This document shows, piece by piece, positions 21,898 to 61,253 of a DNA stretch of 64,000 nt. Position numbers and translations under genes: made by a program. The DNA lies in the IMG/VR virus record IMGVR_UViG_3300028558_000791, positions 186,001 through 250,000 of that record; one strand, given 5' to 3'. Numbering within the stretch: position 1 is the stretch's first letter; each line of letters begins with the position of its first letter. The notes under the pieces were generated by a model that was given only the letters and a program-made list of their open reading frames with translations, did no database searches and was not told the origin of the DNA.

Positions 21898-22018
21898 CGT
21901 AAGTTTCACACCGTATTCCCTGGCACAGTACACGCAGTCTATTCTTAGACTGAAAAATCCCCTAGAGTGGGTAAGATGTACAGACGTGTTACAATGCACA
22001 ACCACATCAGGAGGTCGT

Positions 22019-25000
22019 ATGACCGACTTTGTTTCATTGCATAATCAGACTGAGTTTTCTATTCTCGATTCAATCATCTCGCCCAAGGGGCTCTTCAAAC
22101 GAGCCAAAGAGTTAGGGCAGACAGCCGTTGCGATTACAGACCATGGCACACTAGCTGGAGCTTGGGATGCATGGAAAGCATCCAAAGAAACCGGAGTCAA
22201 ACTCATTATTGGTTGTGAGTGTTATTTTCAAGATGACGCTGCCAATGTCAATGAGAAGTTTCGTCATATCATTTTGCTAGCCAAGAACGCTGTTGGCTAT
22301 CGCAATCTTCTAACGTTGAACAAGAAGGGTTTCGACCAAAGTTCTTTCGTAGGTAAGCGCGTATACTCGGTTCTAGATTGGAATCTATTGGCCGAACATG
22401 CTGAGGGTCTCATTTGTTTGACGGCTTGTGGTAACGGTATTATCAGCCAGCCCATTATGAAGGGCAAGCTAGATGATGCTGAGAGAACGCTATTGCGCCT
22501 CAAGGATTTGTTTGGCGAGAATTTGGGTATCGAGATTCAGCCCAACAATATGAAGCGTGGTTCAAACATCTTTAACGATGAAATCGATCAAGACTTTTTG
22601 AACAGACAATTAGTGAAGCTCGGCAAGAAGCACGACATTCGTGTGGTCGCCGCTTGTAATGCGCACTATCTAACTAAGGAAGAGTCTAGTACTCATGATG
22701 CCTTTTTGGCAATTGGGTCTCACCAACCAATTCATTCTGGGTTCCGTCTTCGTTACCCCGTGCCAGAGTTTTATCTCAAGACTGGTGATGAAGTAAAGGA
22801 TTTCTTCACTAGAGTTTTCAAGGATGACGCTCAGACGTTTATCGACAACAGCATATACTTCTCCAATCTGTGCGAAGTGCCAGAATGGATTGACCCTAAG
22901 TATTCTAATCCATCAGGTAAGGAACTGCCACAGTTTCCGGTCAAAGATGAACTGGACTATGCTCAATTCCGTACTTGGGTTGCAACTCAGCCAGAAGATG
23001 TTCAGAAGTTAGAAGAAGATAAACTCTTCTTACGCTACCGTTGTGTTATGACGTTTGACTCTCGTGTCAAAAATTTGACACCAGAAAAACACAAAGAGTA
23101 TATGGCTCGTATTGATGAGGAGCTAGACGTTTTGGAGTTCCACGGCTTCTCTAGCTACATGCTCATCGTAGCCGATTTTATAGACTGGGCCAGAAAGCAT
23201 GAAATTGCTGTTGGTGAGGGTCGTGGTTCGGTCGGCGGCTCATTGATTGCATACCTGCTAGGAATCCATCAGGCCGATCCAATTAAGTACAATTTGATCT
23301 TTGCTCGTTTCCATAACAAGGAAAAGTCAAGCTTCCCCGATATTGATACGGACTTTGCGCCCTCTGGCCGTCCATTGGTTCAAGAATATCTACGAAACAA
23401 ATATGGAGCGGACCATGTAGCCCACGTTAGCAACGTCAACACTATTACGCCCAAGGTGTATGTGAAGGATATTGCCCGCGTTTGTGAGCTTGGTGGTTCC
23501 AAAGAAGATGCCGTTAGAATTGGCAATGAAGTGGCTAACTGCATTCCAGCAGAAATCCATTCTATTGACGATGCGTTGGCTAAAGTTCCGCTGTTTGCGG
23601 AATACGCCAAGAAATATCCAGAGTTCGAAAAGTACAAAGCTATCTGTGGAAAGTACCGTGCCTGGTCCACTCACGCTGGTGGTATTATCATCTCCGCTCG
23701 TCCCCTCACTGGACTTGTGCCGTTGAGAAAGGATAAAGATGGAGCATTGGCGATTGAGTATGATAAGGACAAGGCCGAAGAAAATGGTCTAGTCAAGATG
23801 GATACTTTGGGCCTTTCGACTCTGGATACTATTGGTCAAACCATGAAGCTGATCAAGGAGTCCGGTAAAATCGTTCCTGAAGTCATCAGCTATGATGAGT
23901 ACGACCAAGAAGCATACGATATCATTTCTAATGGTGATACGTTCTGTGTATTCCAGCTTGGAACATCTGGTGGTACGATTGATTTGTGTAAACAAATCAA
24001 GCCTAAATCTGTCAATGATATTAGCTACATTAACTCGTTAGCGCGTCCTTCTGCCCGTGATATGAGAAAGGACTTTATCCTTACTAAGGATGGAAAGAAA
24101 CCATTCTCTCTATTGCATCCAACATTAGGTCGAGCATTCAATAATACTTTCGGATTCGGTTTGTATGAAGAAAGTCTTATGTATTTAGCTCAAGACGTAG
24201 CAGGATGGAGCTTGCATGGAGCTGACCGTTTGCGTAAACTGACTAAGGAAAAGGGAAAGAATCCTAAGAAAGCGCAGGAATGGAGAAACGAATTTATCAA
24301 GGGCGCTGTTGAGAACAATGTAAACGAAGCTATTGCGAAACGTATCTGGGATGAAGTTGTTGACAAGTTCCAAGGTTACGGTTTCAATATGTCCCACTCC
24401 ATCTTGTATTCTATGACGAGTTACAAGACGGCATATCTCAAAGCTCATTTTCCAATTGAGTTCTTGATGGCTAACTTGATGGCTGAAGTCAAGTCCAATG
24501 CGCCAGACTCTAAGGGTAATATTGAGAAGATTAAGAAGGAGATTCGTAAACGTCGAGTCAAGATTGTTCCCCCAGATATCAACAAGTCTCAATTGGTTTA
24601 TACGATTGAAGATGGAAACAGATTGATTACTGGTTTGGATGCAATCAAGTTCGTAGGTGCAGATGCAATCAAGGAAATTATTGAGAAGCGACCGTTCACT
24701 GACTTCTTTGACTTTATGACCAGAGTAAGTTCCAAGGCAGTACGAGCGAATAGTATTCAAGCGCTTGCCGCGTGTGGTGCATTGGATTCGTTCAAGATTC
24801 CTCGTAAGCTGATGTTTTTGTATTGTTCTGACTATCGTAAGAAGTTACAGGTCTGGCTCAAGAAGCATGATCCAACGGTAGACCAGTTTGTTTACCCATG
24901 GCCTGCTGAACCAGATTGGTCGATGCCTGAAGTGTATGCTTTAGAGCAATATTATTTGGGAGAATCGTTTACTTGTAAACCTGCATTGGCTTATGGTAGA

Positions 25001-25534
25001 TTCTTTGATGGAGAGTTTGTGACTGTTCAGGACATTAAGCGATCCAAAGATAAGACCAATGTATCTTCTGTCAAAGGCATCATCCGAGACTTTTTTGAAT
25101 TTCGTGTCAAGAAGGAAGGTAAGTATTATGGTCAGCCAATGGTTAAGGCCGTAATGGAAGATAAGAATGGTGACCAATGTACATTGACGATCTTCCCAGA
25201 TCGTTGGAAGGTTGTGCAAGAAAGGATTGGAGAACTCAACAAGAAGGCTGAATTCGATGTAGGTATCGCATTGTTCTTTTCAGGGAATACCAATTCTTAT
25301 GAAGACGATATGGGTGTCATATTGGATCAATTGTATCATATTGCCCTGCCACCTCCCCTGCCAACCGACTTGAAAGCCAAGAAAATCAACCTCAAAGAGG
25401 CTAAGGCTAAAATGTTTGGAATTAAGGAAGAAGCCGAAAAACCTAAGAGTCCTCAGGAGATACTCGATGAAATCGAGGATACTTTGTATGATGAAGGTCT
25501 TATCGATTTGGATGACGAAAACGAGGATGACTGA
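22019..25534 (+). CDS. dnaE: DNA polymerase III alpha subunit
   Basis: PHP domain (SLHNQTEFSILD, AITDHG), GRGSVGGSL, catalytic FPDIDTDF, STHAGG, KMDTLGL, FNMSHS, OB fold; SD GGAGG before ATG 22019; no intein seen. Confidence 0.97.
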   Translation: MTDFVSLHNQTEFSILDSIISPKGLFKRAKELGQTAVAITDHGTLAGAWDAWKASKETGVKLIIGCECYFQDDAANVNEKFRHIILLAKNAVGYRNLLTLNKKGFDQSSFVGKRVYSVLDWNLLAEHAEGLICLTACGNGIISQPIMKGKLDDAERTLLRLKDLFGENLGIEIQPNNMKRGSNIFNDEIDQDFLNRQLVKLGKKHDIRVVAACNAHYLTKEESSTHDAFLAIGSHQPIHSGFRLRYPVPEFYLKTGDEVKDFFTRVFKDDAQTFIDNSIYFSNLCEVPEWIDPKYSNPSGKELPQFPVKDELDYAQFRTWVATQPEDVQKLEEDKLFLRYRCVMTFDSRVKNLTPEKHKEYMARIDEELDVLEFHGFSSYMLIVADFIDWARKHEIAVGEGRGSVGGSLIAYLLGIHQADPIKYNLIFARFHNKEKSSFPDIDTDFAPSGRPLVQEYLRNKYGADHVAHVSNVNTITPKVYVKDIARVCELGGSKEDAVRIGNEVANCIPAEIHSIDDALAKVPLFAEYAKKYPEFEKYKAICGKYRAWSTHAGGIIISARPLTGLVPLRKDKDGALAIEYDKDKAEENGLVKMDTLGLSTLDTIGQTMKLIKESGKIVPEVISYDEYDQEAYDIISNGDTFCVFQLGTSGGTIDLCKQIKPKSVNDISYINSLARPSARDMRKDFILTKDGKKPFSLLHPTLGRAFNNTFGFGLYEESLMYLAQDVAGWSLHGADRLRKLTKEKGKNPKKAQEWRNEFIKGAVENNVNEAIAKRIWDEVVDKFQGYGFNMSHSILYSMTSYKTAYLKAHFPIEFLMANLMAEVKSNAPDSKGNIEKIKKEIRKRRVKIVPPDINKSQLVYTIEDGNRLITGLDAIKFVGADAIKEIIEKRPFTDFFDFMTRVSSKAVRANSIQALAACGALDSFKIPRKLMFLYCSDYRKKLQVWLKKHDPTVDQFVYPWPAEPDWSMPEVYALEQYYLGESFTCKPALAYGRFFDGEFVTVQDIKRSKDKTNVSSVKGIIRDFFEFRVKKEGKYYGQPMVKAVMEDKNGDQCTLTIFPDRWKVVQERIGELNKKAEFDVGIALFFSGNTNSYEDDMGVILDQLYHIALPPPLPTDLKAKKINLKEAKAKMFGIKEEAEKPKSPQEILDEIEDTLYDEGLIDLDDENEDD

Positions 25535-25636: not shown

Positions 25637-26530
25637 ATGACCAAAATCAAACTCAAGGAATGGGCTGACCGTCACAACCTATCATATTTAACTGCAAATA
25701 GACATTTTCATGCAGGTATGATTCCAGGTGCGGTGCAGCTAGACTCAGGTACCATCCTTGTGGAGGATGAATCTCTGGAGCAGTCCATGGCCGCAAATCC
25801 ATCTCACGGTGATGCAATGTCTCTCTTCCTTAAAAAGACAGTTGAGTTTAGCAAGAACAATTCTACAGTAGAAGATTTTGCTGCTTTCATCATCTCTAAT
25901 TTCCAAATCAGGTTGAATACAACTCCTGATAGTCCTAAATACTCTCGTCGTAAACCAGAAGCGGATGAAGTGCAAAAACACTTTCAGCAATTCTTACCAG
26001 ATAAAGAATCCATTGAGCATCTAAAAGCCGTTAAGTCTTTGCTCAAGGAAGGTAAGCAAGCTGGTGATGTTGTGCCTGCCGAGGCAGCGCTCCCCGAGGC
26101 AGCGCTCCCCGTGGCAGCCACTTCACCCGTTGCTGGTTTAGATGAGAATCTCATGCAAGATTTTTTGGCGTCTCCTAGCGCCACAGACGTACGTATGTAC
26201 GGGAATGTTACTGAAGGTCTGGTATCACGAAGTGTTGATTTTGACACAACTCCACAACAGATCAACTATACCGGCTCTACAAGCCAGACCTTCAGTAACG
26301 CTTCTTTCAGCGAAGGCGTTAGTAGTAACTACATGGTAAGTGGTGTAAACGCAGCAAATCCAGTCTCACTCGGTTTTGTTGGAGCTAGCGTAATACTTAA
26401 TGCTGTCCCAGCCTCCGCTCCATTTCAACCAACACAAAAAGAATTATTGTCAGCCACACAGGTTATAGAGACAACCGAGACTGACGACCTCCCACGCAAG
26501 CGTGGCAGAAAACCATCTAAGAAGAGATAA
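25637..26530 (+). CDS. DNA-binding protein: IS607/MerR-like N-terminal HTH, no resolvase domain, basic AT-hook-like tail
   Basis: IKLKEWADRHNLSYLTANRHFHAGMIPGAVQLDSGTILV resembles the IS607 TnpA N-terminus; ends PRKRGRKPSKKR. Confidence 0.65.
   Translation: MTKIKLKEWADRHNLSYLTANRHFHAGMIPGAVQLDSGTILVEDESLEQSMAANPSHGDAMSLFLKKTVEFSKNNSTVEDFAAFIISNFQIRLNTTPDSPKYSRRKPEADEVQKHFQQFLPDKESIEHLKAVKSLLKEGKQAGDVVPAEAALPEAALPVAATSPVAGLDENLMQDFLASPSATDVRMYGNVTEGLVSRSVDFDTTPQQINYTGSTSQTFSNASFSEGVSSNYMVSGVNAANPVSLGFVGASVILNAVPASAPFQPTQKELLSATQVIETTETDDLPRKRGRKPSKKR
26081..26110 (+). repeat. In-frame 15-bp tandem duplication (EAALP x2)
   Basis: gaggcagcgctcccc twice, followed by a partial third copy. Confidence 0.9.
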
Positions 26531-26532
26531 TC

Positions 26533-27690
26533 ATGCAGCTACACAATCGTTTATCCAATTTGTTTCAAAAAGAAACTGACAGACTACTCAAGGGTTTCCT
26601 CAACGATAATCCCGATGTACTTAAGAAGTATGTTGAAGGTGGTGTTGTTGCCGTAGGCGCCGTTCTCAGACCAATCAATTCCTTTATGAGACACCTATTA
26701 GTGGTTCAAGGATTGGACCCGGAGGCCGTTCCTGGCGAGAAGCAAAGGCTTCTTGTCCTACAGTCTCTAACCAATTTCTTCGATTCAAAGCATGAAAAAG
26801 ACTTTGATGATGATTACGATCTATCTTGGGTTAATCAAAAGTTTGAAAAGACCAGAGGCGCTCTCAAAGACCTAAAGATGACTAAAGATAAGTTTATGGA
26901 ACTTACTGACCTATCTAGACTTCCAAATGTAAGAACATCTACCGTTCCTACTGTGGAAAGATTAGAAGATCTAACTGGTGAGCCAATTGATCATCTTGCT
27001 CAAAGAGTAAATCCAGTTGCTCCTGAACCAGAGAAGCGTGAGGCTCGTCTTACCTTTTCTGAACGAGCTGAAAAGTTGAAGAGAATTGCTCAAGATATTA
27101 GATCAGAATCTAAAGATTTCAATCCAGGTGATGCTATTCAGCAATTGAGAAGCTTTATGAATGACCTCGGCAAGCAGCTTGAAGATGTCAAGCCAGAGGT
27201 TGAAGAAAAGTCAGCTCCTCTAAAGCCAGGCAAGAAGAAGCTAAACAAAGGTAAGAGAGTCGGTTCAGGACTTAGAGTTCAGCGTGTTTCTAATACAGAA
27301 CCGGTGAAGGAAGTGCCAAGCACCCTAACTGTTGAGTCTGATCGTAAAGTACGCCCACCAGCAATACGTGAACCAGGCCGTAATCTAAGAGACTTGGCTT
27401 CTCAAAAGAAGGCAGAAATCAAGGCTGCTAAAGAAGCTACCCCTGAATTTAAGGCAGAGGCTGCTCGCAAATTAGCTAGAGCTACCGAGCTAACTCATCT
27501 TATGGCTCAAAAGGGTTTAGTTGAAGCTAGCGATACTGCTTTTAACACCCAGGTTGATTCTATGAAGAATTGGTCTGATAACAATTTTGATGCATTGGAA
27601 AGAGTAGTAACTAAGTACGGCCCTACTAAGGATGCCGTTGCAGAGAACAAATTCAAGGGTTCTTTCAGAAGAGCCAAGAATAAGGTATAA
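26533..27690 (+). CDS. Hypothetical protein carrying a copy of the scaffold C-terminal domain
   Basis: 385 aa; 27469-27624 aligns ungapped (20/52 identical) with 59998-60153 of the protease-scaffold ORF. Confidence 0.8.
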   Translation: MQLHNRLSNLFQKETDRLLKGFLNDNPDVLKKYVEGGVVAVGAVLRPINSFMRHLLVVQGLDPEAVPGEKQRLLVLQSLTNFFDSKHEKDFDDDYDLSWVNQKFEKTRGALKDLKMTKDKFMELTDLSRLPNVRTSTVPTVERLEDLTGEPIDHLAQRVNPVAPEPEKREARLTFSERAEKLKRIAQDIRSESKDFNPGDAIQQLRSFMNDLGKQLEDVKPEVEEKSAPLKPGKKKLNKGKRVGSGLRVQRVSNTEPVKEVPSTLTVESDRKVRPPAIREPGRNLRDLASQKKAEIKAAKEATPEFKAEAARKLARATELTHLMAQKGLVEASDTAFNTQVDSMKNWSDNNFDALERVVTKYGPTKDAVAENKFKGSFRRAKNKV

Positions 27691-28137
27691 ATGCCAATCA
27701 GACGCGTTCAACAACAATCAGATAGGGGAAGTATTAGTGACCTAGCCAATGGGGATGACGAGAAGTTTCCTCCAACGCCTCTCGAACTTCATTTGAAGGG
27801 ATTGTATGAACACGCTATGGTTACTAGAGATGAAGCTTTGCTCAACTCGTTAGGATTAATTCCTCTAAATGGCGATGCAAAGAACCCCGTTTCAATTTAT
27901 AGACATCGTGAGTATGTCAATGGCCTCAGCGCTGCTCTTGCGGAACAAATCAGGGAGACAGCTAAAGAAATTGAAGGATGCTTCACTGTAGACCAATCGA
28001 CCTTTTCATTTGAGTTGAAGATGTCTCAACACAAGCAAGCTCAAGCTTTATCCGTAATTTCTGAGCCAGAAACTTTAGTAAAGACAGCAAGTGATGATGG
28101 CGTTCCGCCAAGAAGAAGTTTTAGAAGGGTGATCTAA
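27691..28137 (+). CDS. Hypothetical protein
   Basis: 148 aa, abuts the upstream stop. Confidence 0.7.
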   Translation: MPIRRVQQQSDRGSISDLANGDDEKFPPTPLELHLKGLYEHAMVTRDEALLNSLGLIPLNGDAKNPVSIYRHREYVNGLSAALAEQIRETAKEIEGCFTVDQSTFSFELKMSQHKQAQALSVISEPETLVKTASDDGVPPRRSFRRVI

Positions 28138-28983
28138 ATGAAGTGTGTATCTTGCGAAACAGAAATCAATCCAAAATGGAAACACGCAATAGATATTAAC
28201 GTGTGCCCATTCTGTGGTAAGCATATCATGGAAGAGCACCTTAAGAATTGTGTTACTACTTTGGCTGCCGCTATGGAAGCCATGCTCAAATACCCTGAGC
28301 AGCTAGATGATTGGTTACTTTCAAACCATAATTACATCAAAACAGATTCACCAAATCTTAGAGAGTTCCTTCCTAAAGAAGCTCTTAAAGAGATGCGTAA
28401 AGTTCTTGATGATGAAGAGTTCCAAGAAAAGAAGAAGTCGGTTGTCAGGATCAAAACTCGTGATGAGGACGGTAACGTAACTGAGCAAGATGTTGTTGTT
28501 GAAAAGATGACAACTGACGATAGAACTCAGACGTTCCATGATCGTGCCAACAATATGCTAAAGCAAGAGAAAGCCGTGGACGGTGACCCTAAAAGTGTCG
28601 CCGACAAAACTAAAGATCTTAGGGCAGTTGCAGAAAAAGTCAAGAGAGAAGTCGCAGCAGCCATGTCCAACAAAGAAGGTGGTATGGCATCTATGACGAG
28701 CAAGGAAATGATGGCAGAAGCTGATCCAGAAGCAGTTGCCGAATTCCAGTCCGTAATCGGTAGCGGTGATATAGTTGCTTCGGGATTGCCGGCCCAAGCC
28801 ACAGCCGATGGGGATGATGATGAAATCCCACCAGCCGTTCTTGCTATGGCCAACATGAAGAAAGGCGGCGGCCCTGCCGGTGCCAATGAAAAAGATATGA
28901 GAGCGCTTGTCAACATGCAAGCGAAAGCTCAAGGCGCATCCAAGAGATTGGGCTCGGGTAAAGGTAGTTTCTCAAGAGGGTAA
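28138..28983 (+). CDS. Hypothetical protein with N-terminal zinc ribbon
   Basis: CVSC...CPFC. Confidence 0.75.
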   Translation: MKCVSCETEINPKWKHAIDINVCPFCGKHIMEEHLKNCVTTLAAAMEAMLKYPEQLDDWLLSNHNYIKTDSPNLREFLPKEALKEMRKVLDDEEFQEKKKSVVRIKTRDEDGNVTEQDVVVEKMTTDDRTQTFHDRANNMLKQEKAVDGDPKSVADKTKDLRAVAEKVKREVAAAMSNKEGGMASMTSKEMMAEADPEAVAEFQSVIGSGDIVASGLPAQATADGDDDEIPPAVLAMANMKKGGGPAGANEKDMRALVNMQAKAQGASKRLGSGKGSFSRG

Positions 28984-29342: not shown

Positions 29343-29849
29343 ATGAGCCAAACAGTAAGACTCGGCGATGTTTTAGGTTCTAATTTAGAGGAAAATTTCA
29401 AAGATTTCGACCTCACCGAGATACAGGAAGTATTAGAACAGCTACGAGACATTGATGCAATTGATTTGGCTCACGCTGAGATGTTGCAACAACAATCACT
29501 AAGGGGAGCAGACATTATAGTCGGTTACCTTTCAAAGATTGTAAAGACAGTAGGTTATCTAGAATCGCAAGTAAACAGTACGAAGAATAAAGTGTCCTTA
29601 GAATATGTAGCGCCTGATGGGGCTCGAACGACAGTGGACATGAAGAAATGGGCGGGAGAATCATCGCCTGAAGTTGAAAAAGTACAAATAAAATTAGCAG
29701 AAGCCAAGGGCGCGAAGATCGTCCTTGAACGAAAATACGAGATTTTAGTGAAGTCCCACCACCATTTTAAAGACATTGCGGCGGGCCTCCGAAAGACGAT
29801 CCTCGGTTATAGTTCAGGAACCAGCAACGCGGGCGAAGGCTACGAATGA
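29343..29849 (+). CDS. Helical hypothetical protein directly upstream of recA; possible UvsY-like mediator
   Basis: 168 aa, long amphipathic helices, SD AGGAG; function inferred from context only. Confidence 0.55.
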   Translation: MSQTVRLGDVLGSNLEENFKDFDLTEIQEVLEQLRDIDAIDLAHAEMLQQQSLRGADIIVGYLSKIVKTVGYLESQVNSTKNKVSLEYVAPDGARTTVDMKKWAGESSPEVEKVQIKLAEAKGAKIVLERKYEILVKSHHHFKDIAAGLRKTILGYSSGTSNAGEGYE

Positions 29850-29860
29850 TGGGAGATAAA

Positions 29861-31069
29861 ATGTCAGATGATAAGAAAAAGAAGTCAGATAGGCTAACCG
29901 CGTTTTTCCGAAGTTTTGCCGATGCAGACGAACAATTAGACTTTAGACTCGCCCACGAAACCATGGGAGAGAAGCTCCCCGTGACTTCCTCTGGTTCATT
30001 AGTTCTCGATGACGCTTTGTCATCTGGAGGACTTCCTAAGGGCAGATTAATTCAGTTCTATGGTGCTCCTGGTAGCGGTAAGACCTTGATGGCCATGCTA
30101 GCAATGAAAGAAGCTCAGCAAGCTGAGCCGGGCACTCAACAAATGTTCATTGACGCTGAAGGGACATTTGATGCTAAGTGGGCTGAAATTTTGGGATTGG
30201 ATGTTTCTCGTATCATTGTCGTTGATGGTGAGACTGCCGTTATTGGCCGTAGCTGTTTCGAAATGATCCTTGGCGTTCCTAAGGAAGACAAGAAGACTCA
30301 CTTGCTCGTCGGTAAGACCAAGCAAGGTTTGCTCGATATGATTATGGCAGGCGAGTTTAATATCAACATGGTTGTATTGGATTCACTTGGCGCTATTATT
30401 CCACCAGGCGAAGATGTTTCGGCTGTTGGAAAGATGAACATGGCTTTGTTAGCTAGATTCTTAACCACTACTTTCCGTAAGCTTTCTCTAGATGCAAATA
30501 GGGCTAATGTGCCATTCATTTTCATCAACCACAAGAAGGCTAATATGGATCCTTATGGTGTGGACCATTCATTCTCCGGCGGAAATACTTACGCTCACTT
30601 CTTGAGTGCCAACGTTTACTTTGAAGCAGTGGCACGTGCAGACGCACAAATCTTGGATGAAAAAGAGCAAAAGGTCGGTCATACAATGCGTGCCACCATT
30701 GAAAAGTCGAAGTTCGGCCCTTACCCACGTAAGTGCGAATTCAAAGTGAACTTCGGCATCGGTATCATTGATAAGCACGAAGAGGTCGCACAGCTAGCCT
30801 TGGACTACAACGTAGTCGTCAAGACCTCCACAGTGTCCCATGAATATGGCGACAAGAAGTGGGTTGGATTTCCAAAGTTCTGTGAAGCCGTCAAAGATGA
30901 TCCAGCCTTAGCGGCTGAGTTGACTCAGAAGATTGGTGAAGCTCGTGATTACAAGAGAGATGCCGCCAGAAGAGAACAAGAAGCAAAGAAAGAAGCTGCT
31001 TTGGCTCCAGCAGTAGCAGATGATGCTAGTGTTGAAATAGATACGAAGAAGAGTAAGAAAGGTAAGTAA
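29861..31069 (+). CDS. recA: RecA recombinase
   Basis: SGSLVLDDALSSGGLPKGR, GAPGSGKT, FIDAEG, VVLDSLGA, FINH, SGGN, KSKFGPYP; SD GGAG before ATG 29861. Confidence 0.95.
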   Translation: MSDDKKKKSDRLTAFFRSFADADEQLDFRLAHETMGEKLPVTSSGSLVLDDALSSGGLPKGRLIQFYGAPGSGKTLMAMLAMKEAQQAEPGTQQMFIDAEGTFDAKWAEILGLDVSRIIVVDGETAVIGRSCFEMILGVPKEDKKTHLLVGKTKQGLLDMIMAGEFNINMVVLDSLGAIIPPGEDVSAVGKMNMALLARFLTTTFRKLSLDANRANVPFIFINHKKANMDPYGVDHSFSGGNTYAHFLSANVYFEAVARADAQILDEKEQKVGHTMRATIEKSKFGPYPRKCEFKVNFGIGIIDKHEEVAQLALDYNVVVKTSTVSHEYGDKKWVGFPKFCEAVKDDPALAAELTQKIGEARDYKRDAARREQEAKKEAALAPAVADDASVEIDTKKSKKGK

Positions 31070-32607: not shown

Positions 32608-33168
32608 ATGGCAAAAACTATACTTGGCTTCGACGCCTCTTCGACTACTATTGGATATTGTGTATTAAGTTGGGATGAAACTACTAATGACATTTCCTTT
32701 GTCAAAGCAGGATATATCAAACCTAAGAAGACTGGAACTATTATTGAAAGAATAGTAGATACTAGAAATCAGGTTCAGAAAGTAATTGTAGATGCCCAAC
32801 CAGACTATATTGGAATTGAGGAAATTATTCAGTTCATGAAAGGTAAAAGCACGGCTAAGACTATTATCATGCTAACTACATTCAACAGAATGGTATGTTT
32901 GACCTCTTACGATTATCTGGGTAAATCTCCAACACTCTATAGTGTAATGACTATTCGTCATGGATTGAAGTTCGGCAAAGAATTACCAAAAAAAGAAGAA
33001 ATGCCGGCCCTTGTCGCCCAACATTTAGGAATTACATTTCCTTACGAGTATAATAAAAAGGGCAACATCAAGGTCGAAAGTTTTGACAAAGCTGACGGCA
33101 TCGCCGTTGCCCTTTATCATGCCCGAGTATTATCGGGTAAGGTGAAGCCCAAGGGTAAGAAGAAATGA
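32608..33168 (+). CDS. ruvC: RuvC-like Holliday junction resolvase
   Basis: TILGFDASSTTIGY, IGIEE, DKADGIAVA (D, E, D, D catalytic pattern). Confidence 0.85.
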   Translation: MAKTILGFDASSTTIGYCVLSWDETTNDISFVKAGYIKPKKTGTIIERIVDTRNQVQKVIVDAQPDYIGIEEIIQFMKGKSTAKTIIMLTTFNRMVCLTSYDYLGKSPTLYSVMTIRHGLKFGKELPKKEEMPALVAQHLGITFPYEYNKKGNIKVESFDKADGIAVALYHARVLSGKVKPKGKKK

Positions 33169-47411: not shown

Positions 47412-49295
47412 ATGCCAAGTCTACATATTGAAAATAAAGAAATGTTCGAGAAGATGAAGAAGCAACTTGCAATGCTTGACCCTGTAACTTTTTGCGAGTC
47501 CAATTTAACATTGGAAGGAGAGCCATTCAAACTAAGTGGTAATGGATATAAGCCGTTCTCAGATATCTATAGATACATCGGAATCAAAGCATTAGAGCCA
47601 GATGCAAAACCAGTTATCTTAGTTAAGGGACGTCAGGTAGGAGCCACTACGATGGCCAGCGCCCTAGAAATGTACTTCATGGGTTCTGGATTATTTGGTG
47701 ATGGATTCCGTCCACCAATCCGTATCATTCATGCATTCCCTCAATTGGAATTAGCTGCCGCTTATTCAAAGACCAAGCTTCAGCAAATGATTAGTCAGGC
47801 TAAGATTCCCGAAGGAACTCCAGAAAACAAGGCTTCCCGCCCAAAGTCTTTCATGCAGCAATTGCTTGATCAGTCATCTCCAACTAATGACTCTTTGCAC
47901 TTCAAACAGTTTATTGGCGGAAACCATTTGTGGGTTGAGTCAACTGGTATTGATGCCGACAGAATCATGGGTCGTACCGCTGACATTCTATTCTTTGACG
48001 AAGTCCAGAAGACTACCAGCCAAGCCATCGGAAACGCGCTCAAGATTCTAACCAACGCTAAGTATGGTAGACCAACTAAGGGCGTACAAGTTTTCTTTGG
48101 AACGCCTCGTCGTAAGGGATCTGATTACCACAAGATGTGGCAGTCATCTTCTCAACAGTATTACTATTTAGGATGTGAGAGCTGTAAAGAACATTTCCCA
48201 CTATATACTCCAGGATCTGATGATTGGGAGAAAGTTTGGATTCACGGTAAAGTTGTTAAGTGCTCTAAGTGCGGACATGAACAAGATAAGCTACAAGCAC
48301 AGGAACGTGGTAAATGGGTAGCCTTTAAGAATCCAAATGACCCAGACTGTGATATGATTGGCTTTCATATTAATCAGCTTTACATGCCTAAATTCACACG
48401 AGAAGATATCGATAAGGAAAAGCCGGGCCGTCATCCAATCAATACGGAACGTGTTTTTCAAAACGAAGTTCTTGGAGAGTTTTACCAGGGCGATGCAAGT
48501 CCATTGTCTCCAGATGAAGTTCGCACCATGTGCGCTGACTTCGAGAGAAAGTTTAGCCCACGTATTCTTCCATCAAAAGGTATTAACCAATATTTTACTG
48601 TACTTGGAATCGATTATGGCGCTCGTTCCGACTTGGAGCAATTGGCCGATCCAGAAAGAGTTAAGCCGGCAGGACAGTCATACAGCACGGCTGTTGTTCT
48701 ACAAACTAAGGGCGCTCAATTGTTATCAATCGAGTTTGCTACCAAGTTCAAGCGTAATGACGTTGAAAGTAAAAAAGGAATCATTGATCAACTGATGAGA
48801 CAATATAGTATTCAGTTGGCGGTCGGAGACATTGGTTACTCCAATGACTTCTCTTCTATGTTGCATAACACGTATGGAGATAGGTATTTAGTTTCTCGTG
48901 CCCATAATAAGATTAATGACCATGTCAAATTCAATCATGAAGCATTTCCAAAAGAAATCATTTTTGAAAGAGACTTCTACATTACTGAACTTTATGATCA
49001 GATGAAGAAGGGGATGATTAGATTTCCATTTGGAGATTATGAAAAGATAGCCTGGTTGATTGAACACAGTTGCAGTATGGAACTAAAGCCATCTATTTCT
49101 AAATATGGAGATCATACAGTTCATTATGTGAAAGGTGGAACTCCAAACGACGGGTTTATGGCATTGTTGAATGCCTATTTAGCCTTTAAGTTCTTGGTAA
49201 GTAGAGGATTTACAAATAATAATCCGGCTAATCATACAGCCAAAAACCTAACCAAACCCATGGTAATGTCTGGTTATGTGCCCAGGAAGTTCTAA
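47412..49295 (+). CDS. terL: Terminase large subunit
   Basis: VILVKGRQVGATT, LFFDEVQ, FGTP, zinc module CESC...CSKC, GFHINQL, NEVLGE, nuclease LGIDYG, DIGY, DGFMA. Confidence 0.92.
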   Translation: MPSLHIENKEMFEKMKKQLAMLDPVTFCESNLTLEGEPFKLSGNGYKPFSDIYRYIGIKALEPDAKPVILVKGRQVGATTMASALEMYFMGSGLFGDGFRPPIRIIHAFPQLELAAAYSKTKLQQMISQAKIPEGTPENKASRPKSFMQQLLDQSSPTNDSLHFKQFIGGNHLWVESTGIDADRIMGRTADILFFDEVQKTTSQAIGNALKILTNAKYGRPTKGVQVFFGTPRRKGSDYHKMWQSSSQQYYYLGCESCKEHFPLYTPGSDDWEKVWIHGKVVKCSKCGHEQDKLQAQERGKWVAFKNPNDPDCDMIGFHINQLYMPKFTREDIDKEKPGRHPINTERVFQNEVLGEFYQGDASPLSPDEVRTMCADFERKFSPRILPSKGINQYFTVLGIDYGARSDLEQLADPERVKPAGQSYSTAVVLQTKGAQLLSIEFATKFKRNDVESKKGIIDQLMRQYSIQLAVGDIGYSNDFSSMLHNTYGDRYLVSRAHNKINDHVKFNHEAFPKEIIFERDFYITELYDQMKKGMIRFPFGDYEKIAWLIEHSCSMELKPSISKYGDHTVHYVKGGTPNDGFMALLNAYLAFKFLVSRGFTNNNPANHTAKNLTKPMVMSGYVPRKF

Positions 49296-49319
49296 AGTAG
49301 TCTAAATACCGAGGTTTAC

Positions 49320-49327
49320 TGATATAT
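49320..49327 (+). promoter_or_regulatory. TGATATAT promoter-like box upstream of the portal gene
   Basis: Intergenic; lies between tctaaat (49301-07) and atttaga (49331-37). Confidence 0.55.
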
Positions 49328-49375
49328 CACATTTAGAGTATTAGGTAGAGGGTATAGTGGAACAACAGAGGTTAC

Positions 49376-51253
49376 ATGGCTGGTATTAAAAAATCAGGTT
49401 TAGGGGAGGCTCCTTCCTTTTCAGCGAGATTCTTGGAAGGTAGATCCACTACCCCACAGGTCAGCGCCATTATGGCTCATGGCGTTTCAGGAGAGAGAAG
49501 AGTTATTCTTTCTGATGAAGTAGACCAAGGCTATTTTCGCGATGGCTCAGGCCCTAATTACAATAAGATGGCGTTAGCTAACGCCCCTACAAATGCTTCT
49601 AACGTAGTTTCATCTACTGGCGTAAAGAAATATGGACAGGCAGTTAGCAGTTCTGGTGGTATGTTTCGCGGTATTCATGGCGATACTGTCAAGCAAACCC
49701 CTGAAGTTTATTCGCCATTGTGGCTGAACAGCAACTTAAATCTTCCCCGCGACCGTGCAACTATTAATGCATGGTGTCGTAGCTTTTTCGCATTGAATCC
49801 ATTCGTGCACAATGCAATCAGTTTGCATAGCACTTATCCAATTAGCAAGCTTTCTATCAAATGTCCTAACAAGGATATTGAAAAGTTCTTCGATGATATG
49901 ATTGAAGAAATTGACCTAATGAATATCTGTATTCAAATCGCCCAAGAGTATTGGCTCTTAGGAGAAGCGTTTGTTTATGCAGAACTGGATGAAGGTAAAG
50001 GTAAGTGGAGTCGCCTACACATTCAAAATCCAGACTTCATGATTGTCAAACGTACGGTCGTAGCCAGCGAACCAATCATCATGCTTCGTCCTGATGAGAA
50101 TCTCAAGAAGATCATTTTCTCTAATCGTCCAACCGATATTGAACAGCGTAAGCAGCTTAACCAGCACATTATCGATTCTGTCAGACGCGGAGAAAACATT
50201 CCACTAGACAACTTCCACGTATCACATTTGGCCCGTAGAATTAGTCCTTACGAAATTAGAGGTACTGGACTTCCAGTCTGTATTTTCCGTCAGTTGATGC
50301 TTTTCGACAAGCTTCGTGAATCCAAGTACGCCCAGTCCGATAATATGATTAACCCATTGACTTTGGTCAAGATTGGTTCGGCCGATTACAAGCCAACCTT
50401 CGCTGACCTTGAAGCATGGAGAGGCGTATTCGAAGAAGCCCAGTACGACAAGGACTTTAAGATTTTCACTCATGAAGGTGTTGCCGTTGAAAGAGTTGGT
50501 TGGGGACAGGGTATCTATGATATCTCTGGAGACATCACTCAACTTATTAAGGAAATCTTCGTTGGTATGTTCGTTCCACCAGTAATGATGGATGGTGGTG
50601 ATACAACTACTTATGCTAACGGATCTGTAGCTCTTGACGTTCTTCGTCAGAGATACATGCAGTTTCGCAATATGATGTCCCAATGGTTGAAGACCAAGAT
50701 TTTCGCCCCAATCTCTAAGATTCAAGGGTTCTACGACTACTCTGGTGGTGAAAAGCAACTCATTGTTCCAGAAATTGATTGGAACCATATGTCTTTGTTT
50801 GATGCAGACACTTACATCAATAGCTTGGTAACTCTATCTCAGGGACAGGCTGACCAGAAGAGAGTCTCCGTTCATACTTTGTATCGTTCATTGGGTCTTG
50901 AGTATGAAGACGAAGTACGCAAGATGCGTAAAGAAAATGTTCAGAATGCAATCTCCAAGAAGGAAATGGCAGCTCTAGAATCTATGGACCTCAATGCACT
51001 ACGTGCCCTGGATGACCAGGATGAAATTCCAGAGCCAAAACAACCGGGTGCAGGTCAAGAGCAACCACTACCAGGCGAAACTCCAGGTGGAGCCCCTCCA
51101 GGCGGTGGAATGCCGGATCTTGGTGGCCTACCAGGCGGACCTCCTCCACCACCTCCACCAGCAGGTGGCCCTCCACCCCCTCCGAGTGGCGCTTCAGCGG
51201 GTCTTCCTCCACCAGGTGGCGGAGCCCCTCCAGGTCCACCTCCAGCCGGATAA
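49376..51253 (+). CDS. Portal protein with Pro/Gly-rich C-terminal tail
   Basis: Directly after TerL; NPFVHNAISLH, EYWLLGEAFVY, LHIQNPD, SPYEIRGTG, IFVGMFVP, LRQRY; about 75-aa PG tail. Confidence 0.85.
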   Translation: MAGIKKSGLGEAPSFSARFLEGRSTTPQVSAIMAHGVSGERRVILSDEVDQGYFRDGSGPNYNKMALANAPTNASNVVSSTGVKKYGQAVSSSGGMFRGIHGDTVKQTPEVYSPLWLNSNLNLPRDRATINAWCRSFFALNPFVHNAISLHSTYPISKLSIKCPNKDIEKFFDDMIEEIDLMNICIQIAQEYWLLGEAFVYAELDEGKGKWSRLHIQNPDFMIVKRTVVASEPIIMLRPDENLKKIIFSNRPTDIEQRKQLNQHIIDSVRRGENIPLDNFHVSHLARRISPYEIRGTGLPVCIFRQLMLFDKLRESKYAQSDNMINPLTLVKIGSADYKPTFADLEAWRGVFEEAQYDKDFKIFTHEGVAVERVGWGQGIYDISGDITQLIKEIFVGMFVPPVMMDGGDTTTYANGSVALDVLRQRYMQFRNMMSQWLKTKIFAPISKIQGFYDYSGGEKQLIVPEIDWNHMSLFDADTYINSLVTLSQGQADQKRVSVHTLYRSLGLEYEDEVRKMRKENVQNAISKKEMAALESMDLNALRALDDQDEIPEPKQPGAGQEQPLPGETPGGAPPGGGMPDLGGLPGGPPPPPPPAGGPPPPPSGASAGLPPPGGGAPPGPPPAG

Positions 51254-56565: not shown

Positions 56566-59500
56566 ATGCCCATTATTAAACTAGGCGAAGCCCACGAAAT
56601 TAAACTGGAGAACATGGAGTCATGTCTTCCTGAAGTGAGTGCTGAGGTCTTAGATAACTTTAGGAAGTTTGCAACCAATCTAAAGAAGATTGCTCCTAAA
56701 GCTGAAGACTTCCTCTATTTCTCTGCTGTTATGATGCATGCTGCTGAAGCATCTGCGCTTAACGAAGATGGTACACCAAAGCTAACCCTCAAAGGCGAAC
56801 CAGTCCAAGTAGGATGGGATACTAGTGGTGGTACATGGAAATGGGCATCTAATGACCCTAACATTAAGCCATATAAGAATTCTAATGGAGACATATTTCC
56901 AGAAGCAGAATTAACCAAAGCTTACAAGAAGTGGAAGCACAAGCCTCTATGCGTGGATCATAAATCGAGTTCGGTTGACCATGTTAGAGGTTTTATCGTT
57001 GATACTTATTACGACCGCTCACTCAAGAGAGTGATTGCATTGTGCGCCTTAGATAAGGCCGGATTCCCTCAATTAGCTAGACAAATTTCAACAGGCGTTT
57101 CTAACTGTGTATCCATGGGTACAGCAGTAGGAAGAGCCATCTGTTATGACTGCGGTAGAGTCGCTCGTGCTGAGCAAGACTTCTGCGCTCATATGAAGAA
57201 CAAGACTTGCTACGGTGAAATCAACGTAGACCTCAATCCAATTGAGTTATCTATCGTTGTAAATGGTGCAGACCCTAGAGCCAACATCAAACACATCATC
57301 GCCGCAGCAAACACAATGAACACTTACCTAGAGAATCGCGCTAAGGAACTAGAAAAAATAGCCGACCTCAAGTTTAGTGCTCAATTCAGTGTGTCAGATC
57401 TTAATGGTGACGAAGGTGGAGGAAGTGCTCAATTTAATGTTGATGCTACTGACATTAACCAGTTCAAGAGCGAATTAGACGAAGCATTCCGCAAAGTCCA
57501 AGAGTTCAAGAATGTAAAAATTTCTGAAAAAGATACTAATTCTACAGCATCTAATCAGACGTCGGGTTCGATCGCCATGGATGAAGGTGCACCCACGGAT
57601 TCTGGATTGGCTCTCCAAACTCCGCAAGCCATTAGGCTTGCATCCGCTGATGTAGAGGCGGAATCATTGGCTGAGCTTCAGCAAGTAACTGCATCAATTG
57701 AAGCTACGTTAGGTCAAATGAAGAAGAGCTTGGATAAGTTAGCAAAAACTTCTACTACTAAAAAACAAGAGGAAAACATGTCTGGATCAAAAGAAATCAA
57801 TAAGCAAGCTTATTTCCAGGGTGGCGGTGGCGTTAATGAACCAACTCCAGGCCAAGTTAAATATCCAAAGGACGGTCTTAACGAGCAACTTCGTGAACAC
57901 GAAGATAAGCACATGACCGGTCAACCACCTTTCCCTGAGGTTGGTCCAGTGGATGGAATGCATCCTTCTCCAGCTTCGGCTGATCCTTCTGACGAGCTTG
58001 CTCGTAAGAAGATGCTCGCTAGAGCAGAAGCAGAAGAGCGTGCCCTCAAGCGTAACGCCATTGTCAATATGGCCAAGGACGCATTGAAGAGCAAGGAAGC
58101 TTACTACCTCGGTGGTGGCGGTGTAAACGAGCCAACTCCAGGTAAAGTAAAGTATCCAAAAGACAAGCTCAACGAAGAGCTACGTGACTACGAAGATAAG
58201 CACATGGTTGGACAGCCTCCATTCCCAGGTGTTGGTCCAGTCGACGGCATGCACCCTTCTCCATCATCTGCTGATCCAAAGGATGAATTGAAGCGTAAGC
58301 AAATGCTCGCTCGTGCACAACTACGTGCCAGATTTGTCAAGGCCGCTAACAGTAACGGCACTCAGAACAGAGCCAGAAGCGCTTGGGAAGTATTCCTTGG
58401 TGACAAGCTATTGTTGACCGCATCTGTTGACGAACTCTCCGGTGGAAACACTGACGTTCTATATGACTCAATTGCTACTAAGGACTTCGGAGCCAAGTTG
58501 ATCGAAAAGGTCAAAGTTCAAGGCGCTGATGCAGTAAGCAAGCTAATTAAGAAAGCCCAAGGCGCTCCAGGCGCACCACCAGCCGGCCCTCCAGCAGGTG
58601 ATCCATCCAGTGCTCCACCTCCAGGCGGTGACATGGGTGCAGGCGCTCCAGATGCTGGTCCTCCAGCAGAAGACGCAGGCAAGTCTGGTGACCCAAAGCA
58701 AAGCGCAGTAGAACTCGCTGAGAAGGTAAGAGACCTAAGCTCTGACCTAGTAGAAGCAGTTCGTGCCCTAACCGGTGAACAAGCCGAAATGGGTGGCGCA
58801 GGCCCAGCACCAGATGCAGGTGGAGTTGGTGGCCCAGCCGGTGGTCCAATGGCCGCTGATGACCAGGATGCAAAGAAGAAGAAAGACTCTATGGAGTCCT
58901 CTGCTAACTTTAGCACCTCAACTCTCAACACCTTGAGAAAAGAATTGAATGGCGCACTTACTCATGCAATGAAGGAAGCTATTGCAGAGCTAACCGAACA
59001 CCAGCAAGAATTAGACATGATTGCCGGTATGTACGACAAGGGTGCTGTAACTCAATCTAACCAAGACTTTGTTGGAACTATCGTAGAAGACGCATTGAGC
59101 GAAGCTAAGACTGCTGTTGCAGACGGCTTTAAGCTAATGACCGCCTTCGTCAAGTATGCTCGTGGTACCAAGGCAATTGTCAAGCGTGCTGAGATTGAAT
59201 CAGAACTTGAATCACTAGCCGATGGAGACACTATGAGCGACAAGAAGGACAGTCACTCCGCAGACGGCGGTGACTTGATGGGACTAATTAATGACACCAA
59301 TGCAGACTTGGACGCAGTTCAAGAGATGATGGGTGACGACCAGGATCACGATCTTGGCGGTGAACTTGATGGCGATGGCCTAGCTGGACTCTTTGAAGAG
59401 GGTGGCGAAGGTGAAGAACATGGTCACGAGGAACCACTATTCGAAGGTTTGGCTGACGACAACGATCTCACTTTTGAACAAGGTGAGAAAGTACCACCAG

Positions 59501-61037: not shown

Positions 61038-61253
61038 ATGTACAAACAAAGCAGTTTTGAGGACGAACTCTATCGTTCGATGGAGAAGACTATAGTCAAA
61101 AATCAAACCGAAGATAAGCACGGTTTCAATAAGCTAGCTCAAGCTGCTGACCTTTTGAATGCGGCGGCCGATATTTTCGACCGTGCTGGTATGCAAGAGG
61201 AGTCGAAAGACGTTACTAATATTCTAGAAGAACTAGCTAAGGATCTCAAATGA
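61038..61253 (+). CDS. Small protein paralogous to the N-terminus of the next gene
   Basis: SFEDELYRSME...AADLLNAAADIFDRAG vs LFEDELVASME...AAECLHAALEIFEEQG; SD AAGGA. Confidence 0.8.
   Translation: MYKQSSFEDELYRSMEKTIVKNQTEDKHGFNKLAQAADLLNAAADIFDRAGMQEESKDVTNILEELAKDLK

What the first reader, a model, noticed from the sequence alone, without database searches (positions are those of the whole stretch)
27469..27624. Scaffold C-terminal domain duplicated in a gene 32 kb away in the replication region
KLARATELTHLMAQKGLVEASDTAFNTQVDSMKNWSDNNFDALERVVTKYGP (27469-27624) aligns without gaps to KLARAYELTYDMVDRGLCRHDRVTISDQVDQIMRFNDDAFESLKKVVARHEP (59998-60153), with 20 of 52 identical. Both lie near their protein C-termini. 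Scaffold C-termini are the coat-binding elements in P22-type systems. This protein could be a second scaffold, a head-size modulator, an adaptor linking proheads to replication, or an assembly inhibitor.
Basis: partly seen in the sequence, partly recalled or inferred. Interest (0 to 1): 0.75.

Follow-up and report, generated by a model that had tools for sequence, protein, structure and literature searches.

The report
Scaffold domain copy in replication gene
A giant phage related to Bacillus phage G carries one small, previously undescribed three-helix domain twice, once near the end of its head protease-scaffold protein and once in a conserved gene of its DNA-replication operon; the homology is real and old, but whether it links that gene to head assembly is not shown.

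Summary
Residues 313-364 of a 385-aa ORF (26533-27690, "ORF-A") align without gaps to residues 1145-1196 of a 1242-aa ORF (56566-60294, "ORF-B"): 20/52 identical, BLASTP E 3e-8. Profiles of the two protein families match at 98% probability, E 1.8e-14.

The window lies in a 481-kb megaphage whose capsid protein is 54% identical to that of Bacillus phage G. ORF-B is an N-terminal prohead protease fused to a long scaffold-like region in the terminase-portal-capsid module. In phage G the same domain sits in gp21, a separate gene between the protease and capsid genes. ORF-A lies between DnaE and UvsX/RecA, and this synteny holds in distant relatives.

The domain ("DOM", about 57 aa, three helices, pLDDT above 90) has no Pfam, PHROG, NCBIfam or PDB match. 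It is not at the extreme C-terminus; 19 and 46 residues follow it. It also occurs in other architectures.

The scaffold copy has invariant helix-1 tyrosines that ORF-A lacks. Co-folding ORF-A's C-terminus with the capsid protein gave no verdict.

Best reading (about 0.38): DOM docks ORF-A onto the scaffold or procapsid. Nearly equal rival (about 0.33): a generic association module reused in a replication-side protein.

The parts
26533..27690 (+). ORF-A, 385 aa: orphan helical N-domain, disordered basic middle, DOM copy, short conserved tail
   Evidence: ORF list. 75 homologues down to 32% identity, no Pfam, PHROG or NCBIfam match. AF2 model.
26533..26937 (+). ORF-A N-terminal domain (res 1-135), all-helical, family-specific
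   Evidence: Invariant Y33 P47 H54 P63 P67 G68 D94 T125 D126. pLDDT about 80-87. No fold or sequence match.
27457..27630 (+).
   Evidence: HMM envelope 309-366, 84 bits. BLASTP and hhalign. Helices 304-326, 334-344 and 349-362 with pLDDT above 90.
27646..27672 (+). Conserved C-terminal tail motif NKF(K/T)GSFRR of ORF-A (res 372-380); G376, F378 and R380 invariant
   Evidence: Alignments. Tail list of 75 homologues. Predicted disordered.
56566..60294 (+). ORF-B, 1242 aa: prohead protease fused to a scaffold-like region
   Evidence: Conservation profile.
56566..57345 (+). Prohead (head maturation) protease domain of ORF-B (res 1-260)
   Evidence: phrog_18299 E 1.8e-12, res 105-213. tblastn to phage G gp19 at 1e-19, and to genes annotated capsid maturation or prohead protease in Gordonia and Rhodococcus phages. 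Invariant H132, S183 and the cluster C193/C196/C207/H209.
57775..58341 (+). Internal tandem duplication in ORF-B (res 404-495 and 501-592)
   Evidence: 65/92 identical, E 6e-50.
59986..60159 (+). DOM copy in ORF-B (res 1141-1198)
   Evidence: HMM 99 bits. Helices 1119-1158, 1166-1177 and 1181-1193 with pLDDT above 90.
60244..60291 (+). Extreme C-terminus of ORF-B: short amphipathic helix (res 1227-1235) followed by the ending ...KKGVF
   Evidence: Model. Every one of about 60 distinct B-family tails ends in F, preceded by K(K/R)(G)x.
25637..26530 (+). ORF297, directly upstream of ORF-A; its res 64-136 are found fused to two DOM copies in a relative (P0267)
   Evidence: BLASTP E 7e-11. P0267 architecture.
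27691..28137 (+). ORF148, abuts ORF-A (TAA then ATG); ends ...PRRSFRRVI
28138..28983 (+). ORF281, N-terminal zinc-ribbon-like CxxC...CxxC; ends ...GKGSFSRG
21986..25534 (+). DNA polymerase III alpha (DnaE), context of ORF-A
   Evidence: ORF list. Pfam PHP / DNA_pol3_alpha on the syntenic genes of relatives.
29846..31069 (+). UvsX/RecA recombinase, context of ORF-A
   Evidence: phrog_97 E 1.7e-51; PF00154 E 6.5e-33.
47412..51253 (+). Large terminase (47412-49295) and portal (49376-51253), context of ORF-B
   Evidence: phrog_675 E 5e-61; phrog_16240 E 1.1e-49.

Best explanation
DOM is a compact three-helix protein-association domain. It belongs ancestrally to the scaffold part of the head-assembly machinery of the phage-G-related megaphages. 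In ORF-B it lies after the protease and the long scaffold region. It is followed by a flexible linker and a terminal helix-plus-hook, and it helps hold the protease-scaffold in the procapsid core, by contact with other scaffold molecules or with the inner face of the capsid protein. ORF-A acquired a paralogous copy. Through that copy a protein made from the replication/recombination operon docks onto the same assembling core. ORF-A would then be co-assembled into proheads as an accessory or internal (possibly ejected) protein. Shown here: the homology, its age and conservation, the two genomic contexts, the predicted fold, and the protease identity of ORF-B. Inferred: that DOM binds scaffold or capsid protein, that ORF-A's copy keeps that specificity, and that ORF-A enters proheads.
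For: (1) Homology is real. (2) DOM is an old part of the head-assembly protein. It is present in more than 300 ORF-B homologues. It makes up about 97 of the best 143 profile hits among 1.84 billion representatives. In phage G it occurs only in gp21, between protease gp19 and capsid gp27. Phage G has no ORF-A N-domain, so a scaffold-to-ORF-A origin is the more parsimonious direction. (3) The last 240 or so residues of ORF-B form one of its conserved blocks (0.73-0.82 column identity), and DOM folds with pLDDT above 90 in both proteins. (4) Fold-determining positions are kept in both families: K5 A9 L12 M16 G20 A28 Q32 D41 F44 L47 R49 V50 V51. (5) Precedents of the same kind exist. The 80alpha scaffold and SaPI1 CpmB share a C-terminal helix-and-hook and compete for the capsid protein (PMC5644958). 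Herpesvirus UL26/UL26.5 and the T4 capsid-targeting sequence are further examples (own knowledge; T4 and SPN3US papers were listed but not read). (6) One phage G study reports many nucleic-acid-metabolism proteins in particle proteomics (PMC12484599). This is weak evidence and may reflect contamination.
Against: ORF-A is embedded in a tightly packed DnaE...UvsX...SSB gene string; the strongest of the few plus-strand terminator-like hairpins the consensus scan reports in 21-33 kb is the one after SSB, and the synteny is conserved. A more distant phage has a different DOM protein (P0247) in the same slot. A relative fuses an ORF297-like segment to two DOMs. These features point to a replication-side role. 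The scaffold copy's near-invariant helix-1 tyrosines (Y10 92%, Y14 76%) and K48 are not kept in ORF-A (T/Q/K, N/D/K, E), so the two copies may have different partners. DOM also occurs in other architectures. The co-fold of the capsid protein with ORF-A residues 296-385 gave no verdict (not evidence either way). No virion data exist for this uncultured clade.
Confidence: 0.38

Rival explanations
1. DOM is a general-purpose self-association (dimerisation or oligomerisation) three-helix module. The scaffold uses it to oligomerise. ORF-A, and the other DOM proteins in the same genomic slot, use it independently. ORF-A then works in replication, recombination or DNA handling together with ORF297, ORF148 and ORF281, with no physical link to capsids. 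Divergence of the surface residues insulates the paralogues from each other.
For: Strictly conserved position between DnaE and UvsX/RecA in relatives of only 36-42% identity. A slot-equivalent DOM protein with otherwise unrelated sequence (P0247). An ORF297-like segment fused to two DOMs (P0267). Proteins with 2-3 tandem DOMs, a weak sub-threshold KOW match or lysine-rich tails. B-specific Y10, Y14 and K48 are not kept in ORF-A. ORF-A shares its C-terminal SFRR-type tail with the two genes downstream, not with head proteins. One 3.9-kb contig from a soil RNA library spans ORF297 to ORF281 of a relative.
Against: No replication-related fold or family was found for any part of ORF-A. No clamp or other obvious hub for the tails was found. 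DOM's best-populated and oldest home is the head-assembly protein. Self-association of DOM is itself untested.
Confidence: 0.33
2. ORF-A regulates or competes in head assembly. Made early from the replication operon, its DOM occupies the scaffold's binding site. It thereby delays or tunes shell nucleation or capsid size, in the manner of SaPI1 CpmB against the 80alpha scaffold.
For: Shares a scaffold domain. The precedent is PMC5644958. The gene lies in an operon that is probably expressed before the head genes (timing is inferred).
Against: ORF-A is a conserved resident gene of the phage itself, not of a satellite. The large conserved N-domain and tail are unexplained by simple competition. 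The scaffold-specific surface residues are not kept. No binding was shown.
Confidence: 0.1
3. ORF-A is a physical adaptor. Its DOM binds the procapsid or scaffold, while its N-domain or SFRR tail binds replication or recombination proteins. This brings proheads to replicating or recombining DNA for packaging.
For: Two-part architecture with separately conserved modules. The tail motif is shared with neighbouring replication-operon genes.
Against: Scaffold normally leaves, or is degraded, before or as DNA enters. No partner has been identified. The idea is entirely inferential.
Confidence: 0.06
4. The similarity is chance or compositional, for example two amphipathic helices.
For: The domain is short and helical. 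Its profile picks up summed weak matches to designed PPR repeats.
Against: Pairwise E 3e-8, profile-profile E 1.8e-14, and 351 database hits that fall almost entirely into the two families. No single PPR stretch passes on its own.
Confidence: 0.01

Closest known systems
80alpha scaffolding protein gp46 and SaPI1 CpmB (PMC5644958)
   Same: Two different proteins share a homologous C-terminal element of a scaffold. In that system the shared element is what contacts the capsid protein. ORF-B also ends in a short helix followed by a hook-like peptide.
   Different: There the shared element is the last 16 residues and the second protein belongs to a satellite. Here the shared element is a 57-aa folded domain that is not terminal. 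ORF-A lacks ORF-B's terminal helix and hook. The second protein is a resident gene of the same phage in its replication operon. No sequence or fold similarity to gp46 or CpmB was found.
Herpesvirus UL26 (protease-scaffold) and UL26.5 (scaffold); phage P2 gpO; lambda C/Nu3 (own knowledge)
   Same: An N-terminal maturation protease joined to a scaffold whose C-terminal part ties it to the shell, and a second product that shares the C-terminal part.
   Different: In those systems the second product is an in-frame nested product of the same gene. ORF-A is a separate gene 32 kb away and shares only DOM. Homology of ORF-B's protease to assemblin or gpO was not tested here; only homology to the phage G, Rhodococcus phage E3 and Mycobacterium phage Myrna type proteases is shown.
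Bacillus phage G gp19 (protease), gp21 and gp27 (capsid protein)
   Same: The closest cultured relative. The capsid protein is 53.7% identical and the protease matches at 1e-19. gp21 carries the only DOM of phage G (E 2.7e-9) and sits between protease and capsid genes.
   Different: In phage G the protease and the DOM protein are separate genes; here they are fused. Phage G has no second DOM gene and no ORF-A N-domain. No statement about gp21's function or presence in virions was found in the one phage G paper searched for it by exact term; a looser word-start search of the same paper returned two unshown 'gp21' matches.
T4 capsid targeting sequence of internal proteins; ejection proteins of phiKZ/SPN3US-type giant phages (own knowledge; papers listed but not read)
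   Same: Proteins encoded outside the head gene cluster are delivered into the prohead by a shared targeting element that associates with the scaffold core.
   Different: The T4 signal is a short N-terminal peptide removed by the protease. DOM is a folded, C-proximal domain. Packaging of ORF-A has not been shown.

Membership tests
Phage scaffolding protein with a C-terminal coat-binding element (P22 gp8, phi29 gp7, 80alpha gp46 kind) | Gene lies in the head module between the portal or protease gene and the major capsid gene | tested here: met
   Met for ORF-B: TerL 47412, portal 49376, ORF-B 56566, and the capsid protein about 10 kb downstream at G000:256223-257236. Not met for ORF-A, which lies between DnaE and UvsX.
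Phage scaffolding protein with a C-terminal coat-binding element (P22 gp8, phi29 gp7, 80alpha gp46 kind) | The C-terminal element binds the major capsid protein | tested here: inconclusive
   Co-fold of the capsid protein with ORF-A residues 296-385: ipSAE 0.27, under the mark of 0.32, reported as 'no answer'. ORF-B's C-terminus was not co-folded because only one job was allowed.
Phage scaffolding protein with a C-terminal coat-binding element (P22 gp8, phi29 gp7, 80alpha gp46 kind) | Sequence or fold similarity to a solved scaffold C-terminal domain | tested here: not met
   The profile against PDB sequences gives no scaffold. Foldseek against PDB gives E above 1. VIA-align gives a best Z of 6.0, within helical noise. 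BFVD lists several 'scaffolding protein' and 'protease' rows, all at E 0.2 or worse.
Prohead protease-scaffold fusion proteins | N-terminal domain homologous to phage head maturation proteases, with conserved candidate catalytic residues | tested here: met
   phrog_18299 E 1.8e-12. tblastn to phage G gp19 and to annotated capsid maturation or prohead proteases. H132 and S183 invariant in 111 homologues. Catalysis itself was not tested.
Prohead protease-scaffold fusion proteins | The remainder of the protein acts as a scaffold and is processed or removed on maturation | not testable with these tools
   Only indirect evidence: a long, partly low-complexity helical region, a homologue as a separate gene (gp21) in phage G, and its position in the head module.
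T4-type capsid-targeting-sequence internal proteins | A short N-terminal targeting peptide ending at a protease cleavage site | tested here: not met
   The shared element is a folded 57-aa domain near the C-terminus. The N-termini of ORF-A and ORF-B are unrelated.
Any curated protein family (Pfam-A, PHROGs v4, NCBIfam 20) | Significant HMM match over the DOM region | tested here: not met
   None for ORF-A, for ORF-B's C-terminus, for phage G gp21 or for 63 family members scanned singly.
Pentatricopeptide (PPR) repeat | A 35-residue helix-turn-helix repeat matched over its whole length and in tandem | tested here: not met
   Only profile positions 4-21 match designed PPR proteins, by summed repeats. 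No stretch passes on its own, and neither ORF has tandem copies.

The most novel reading that the evidence does not exclude
DOM is a modular, folded cargo-loading domain of phage-G-related megaphages. Any protein that carries it would be docked on the scaffold core and packed into the giant capsid for delivery with the DNA. Candidates are ORF-A, the ORF297-like fusions, the multi-DOM proteins with lysine-rich tails and the protein with a weak KOW-like match. It would be a phage counterpart of encapsulin cargo-loading peptides, and a handle for identifying injected proteins of uncultured megaphages from sequence alone.
Probability: 0.13. Interest if true: 0.8.

Novelty: new variant of a known kind. 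Interest (0 to 1): 0.45.

Why it matters
Almost nothing is known about how megaphages of about 500 kb build and load their very large heads; phage G is the only cultured example. This finding defines a new conserved domain family, with about 350 cluster representatives and no entry in any curated family library. The domain marks the scaffold region of that lineage. It also shows that the protease and scaffold genes, separate in phage G, are fused in the uncultured clade.

If the copy in the replication operon really docks on the procapsid, it would give a sequence signature for proteins packaged or injected by uncultured megaphages. It would also be a second natural example, after 80alpha and SaPI1, of proteins sharing a scaffold's docking element, this time within a single genome. 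If it does not dock there, the result is a modest one: a reusable three-helix association module in megaphage proteins.

Tried and rejected
1. Co-folding of the capsid protein (alignment A5) with ORF-A residues 296-385 scored 0.27 against a mark of 0.32. The tool reports 'no answer', so this is not evidence for or against binding.

2. A suspected second, degenerate DOM just upstream in ORF-B (res about 1075-1115) was rejected: hhalign probability 0.6% and no HMM hit.

3. On re-reading, the title fits the evidence, with the finding's coordinates being the replication-side copy.

4. Resemblance to PPR repeats consists of summed sub-threshold matches to designed repeat proteins only. Rejected as homology.

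5. Fold searches on both AF2 models found nothing above noise: PDB by Foldseek and PDB by VIA-align on both models, BFVD on the ORF-B C-terminal model only, and AFDB clusters on the ORF-A model only. The ESM Atlas also gave nothing.

6. I tested whether a C-terminal 'KGxF' peptide is shared by ORF-A, ORF-B and other head proteins. Six of about 702 genes carry [KR]G.F in their last 12 residues, against about 1.7 expected. Apart from a 420-aa gene two genes upstream of the capsid gene (L005:5939-7201, ending SKGLFGGLFGK), no head-module protein has it, here or in a relative. The ORF-A to ORF-B link through this motif was dropped as too weak. The SF(R/S)R tail shared by ORF-A, ORF148 and ORF281 stands.

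7. No beta-clamp Pfam domain was found in the genome that could serve as a hub for those tails.

8. DOM was sought in other capsid-related large phages. It is absent from LR745208, Tunturi_5, Lu11 and PaBG, with one weak partial hit in Rctr197k. tblastn of ORF-B residues 1119-1200 (DOM plus the helix before it) against 50,697 phage records found nothing, and tblastn of whole ORF-A found nothing.

The cryo-EM and proteomics paper PMC7316594 is not held, and no supplements are held.

11. Soil metatranscriptomes hold only relatives' contigs. They show presence in RNA libraries, not timing or abundance.

Full report
**What the window is.** The window is bases 186001-250000 of a single 480,838-bp virus record that CheckV rates as complete. 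Its major capsid protein lies just outside the window (G000:C1:256223-257236, 337 aa, phrog_2522 E 2.9e-81). It is 53.7% identical to gp27 of Bacillus phage G. Relatives are on metagenomic contigs of up to about 510 kb, mostly from environmental samples. Only relatives turn up in the soil and rhizosphere RNA libraries. This is an uncultured megaphage of the phage G lineage.

**The observation.** ORF-A (26533..27690, 385 aa) and ORF-B (56566..60294, 1242 aa) are long + strand ORFs.
- I collected 75 homologues of ORF-A and more than 300 of ORF-B. Profile-profile comparison gives probability 98.3%, E 1.8e-14 over 57 columns.
- A 58-position profile built from both families (A2) finds exactly two places in the whole genome.
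- The same profile finds 351 cluster representatives at E 1e-3 or better among 1.84 billion proteins.

The similarity is therefore homology, conserved across two protein families, and not a recent duplication in this one genome.

**Context of the two genes.**
- ORF-B's first 260 residues are a prohead maturation protease: phrog_18299 E 1.8e-12, and tblastn 1e-19 to phage G gp19 and to annotated capsid-maturation proteases of Gordonia and Rhodococcus phages. H132 and S183 are invariant in 111 homologues.
- Upstream of ORF-B are the large terminase and the portal. The capsid gene is about 10 kb downstream.
- The rest of ORF-B is long, partly low-complexity and helical. It contains an internal 92-residue duplication and alternating conserved and variable blocks.
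- In phage G the only DOM match (E 2.7e-9) is in gp21, a 486-aa gene two genes after protease gp19 and before capsid gp27. Protease and DOM protein are thus separate genes in phage G and fused here.
- ORF-A lies in a different module: topoisomerase, SbcCD-like genes, a PD-(D/E)XK nuclease, trigger factor, DnaE (21986-25534), ORF297, ORF-A, ORF148, ORF281, two small ORFs, UvsX/RecA (29846-31069), SSB, DnaJ and primase. This order is kept in relatives whose ORF-A is only 36-42% identical.
- The genes abut one another (TAA then ATG). The strongest of the few plus-strand terminator-like hairpins the consensus scan reports in 21-33 kb follows SSB. One 3.9-kb contig from a soil RNA library spans ORF297 to ORF281 of a relative (weak evidence).

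**Anatomy of the domain.**
- AF2 models built with family alignments give three helices with pLDDT above 90 in both proteins. In ORF-A they are 304-326, 334-344 and 349-362. In ORF-B they are 1119-1158, 1166-1177 and 1181-1193. The first helix extends about 20 residues to the N-terminal side of the conserved core.
- The domain is not terminal. ORF-A continues with a disordered tail carrying an invariant NKF(K/T)GSFRR motif. ORF-B continues with a disordered linker, a short helix (1227-1235) and an ending ...KKGVF that closes with F in all family members listed.
- Positions kept in both families are mostly core and turn residues: K5 A9 L12 M16 G20 A28 Q32 D41 F44 L47 R49 V50 V51.
- Two helix-1 tyrosines (92% and 76%) and K48 (84%) are specific to the scaffold copy. 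ORF-A has polar or acidic residues at those positions.
- No curated family covers the domain. No solved or predicted structure matches above the noise expected for small helical bundles.

**Where else the domain occurs.** I classified the best 143 representatives.
- About 97 are ORF-B-like: protease plus DOM, or C-terminal fragments of such proteins.
- About 25 are ORF-A-like.
- The rest are fragments or other architectures: proteins with two or three tandem DOMs and lysine-rich tails, one with a weak KOW match just under Pfam's cut-off (20.6 against 22.3 bits), and P0267. P0267's N-terminus is homologous to ORF297, the gene just upstream of ORF-A (E 7e-11).
- P0247 is a 278-aa protein with DOM near its N-terminus and otherwise unrelated sequence. 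It occupies the same slot after DnaE and before RecA in a 205-kb contig.
- DOM was not found in more distant large phages with related capsid proteins. BLAST found it in none of 50,697 phage records.

**Interpretation.** Two readings are nearly balanced.
- I rank the docking reading first. DOM is oldest and most populous in the head-assembly protein. It lies in one of that protein's conserved C-terminal blocks. There are also direct precedents for a second protein borrowing a scaffold's docking element (80alpha/CpmB; herpesvirus UL26/UL26.5 and the T4 targeting sequence, own knowledge).
- The rival reading is that DOM is a generic association module reused by replication-side proteins. It is supported by the conserved operon context, the slot-equivalent P0247, the ORF297-DOM fusion, the other architectures and the loss of the scaffold-specific tyrosine face in ORF-A.
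- A competitor or size-regulator role and a prohead-replisome adaptor role remain possible but have no specific support.

**Novelty and verdict.** The domain family is new to the curated libraries. The protease-scaffold fusion relative to phage G is a new observation. The phenomenon, two proteins sharing a scaffold C-terminal module, is a variant of a known kind. The functional claim is untested. Interest is moderate: the finding is real, conserved and gives a concrete experiment, but the sequence evidence does not decide between a link to head assembly and a reused helical module.

Noticed in passing
window 27646-27687, 28108-28134, 28957-28980 (C-termini of ORF-A, ORF148, ORF281): Three consecutive genes end in a similar basic peptide: ...KFKGSFRRAKNKV, ...PRRSFRRVI and ...GKGSFSRG. 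The tails are kept in two distant relatives (L006, L007) at varying distance from the stop codon, so this is a protein-level motif and not a ribosome-binding-site artefact. Only these three of about 702 genes match SF[RSKW]R in their last 12 residues. It may be a shared docking peptide for an unknown hub.
   Followed up: partly
window 19365-20612 and 33165-34094: The phage encodes a full trigger factor (Trigger_N, FKBP_C, Trigger_C) and a DnaJ (J domain, zinc-finger and C-terminal domains) inside the replication module. Both are conserved in relatives.
   Followed up: partly
window 57775-58341 (ORF-B res 404-495 and 501-592): A tandem 92-residue duplication inside the scaffold region, 71% identical (E 6e-50). 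By eye, the N-terminus of phage G gp21 resembles the end of this unit.
   Followed up: partly
window 61038-61253 and 61250-62170: The 71-aa ORF and the N-terminus of the following 306-aa ORF are paralogues (23/65 identical, E 2e-9). They lie directly downstream of ORF-B in the head module; function unknown.
   Followed up: partly
window 60319-61029: A 236-aa extremely charged low-complexity protein, with acidic D/S-rich repeats followed by a K/S-rich tail. It contains a 60-nt tandem repeat (60562-60687, 2.1 copies). It lies right after ORF-B and could be an internal head or core protein.
   Followed up: no
window 57142-57192 (ORF-B res 193-209): An invariant C193-x2-C196 ... C207-x-H209 cluster is inserted in the protease domain. 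It is a possible zinc site and is conserved in 111 homologues.
   Followed up: no
homologues P0176, P0202, P0226 and others; locus L018 4505-9966: Some ORF-B homologues are 1400-1580 aa, with the protease profile split in two. P0176 carries Hint, intein and LAGLIDADG Pfam hits, so inteins appear to be inserted in the protease. In a 205-kb relative DnaE is split by a 505-aa ORF.
   Followed up: no
G000:C1:256223-257236 (L005:8224-9237), outside the window: The capsid protein is at least 87% identical across the 120 best homologues. It has a conserved 41-residue N-terminal extension that I judge from the sequence to contain an amphipathic helix. Phage G gp27 lacks this extension, since only 25 nt separate gp26 and gp27. 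It may be a scaffold-contact arm or a propeptide.
   Followed up: partly
window 25637-26530 (ORF297): A segment of this ORF (res 64-136) occurs fused to two DOM copies in the metagenomic protein P0267. The N-terminus of ORF297 looks, by eye only, like a small helix-turn-helix.
   Followed up: partly
G000:C1:253938-255200 (L005:5939-7201), outside the window: A 420-aa head-module gene two genes upstream of the capsid gene ends ...SKGLFGGLFGK. It is one of only six genes with [KR]G.F in the last 12 residues.
   Followed up: no
whole record G000: IMG/VR labels this 481-kb record a 'provirus' although it is rated 100% complete. The 64-kb window and the 14 kb downstream that I read show only phage-type genes, nearly all on one strand. 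The label looks doubtful.
   Followed up: no
window 43198-43971: A tRNA nucleotidyltransferase (CCA-adding enzyme) homologue (phrog_2244 E 8.8e-14) lies between the replication and head modules.
   Followed up: no
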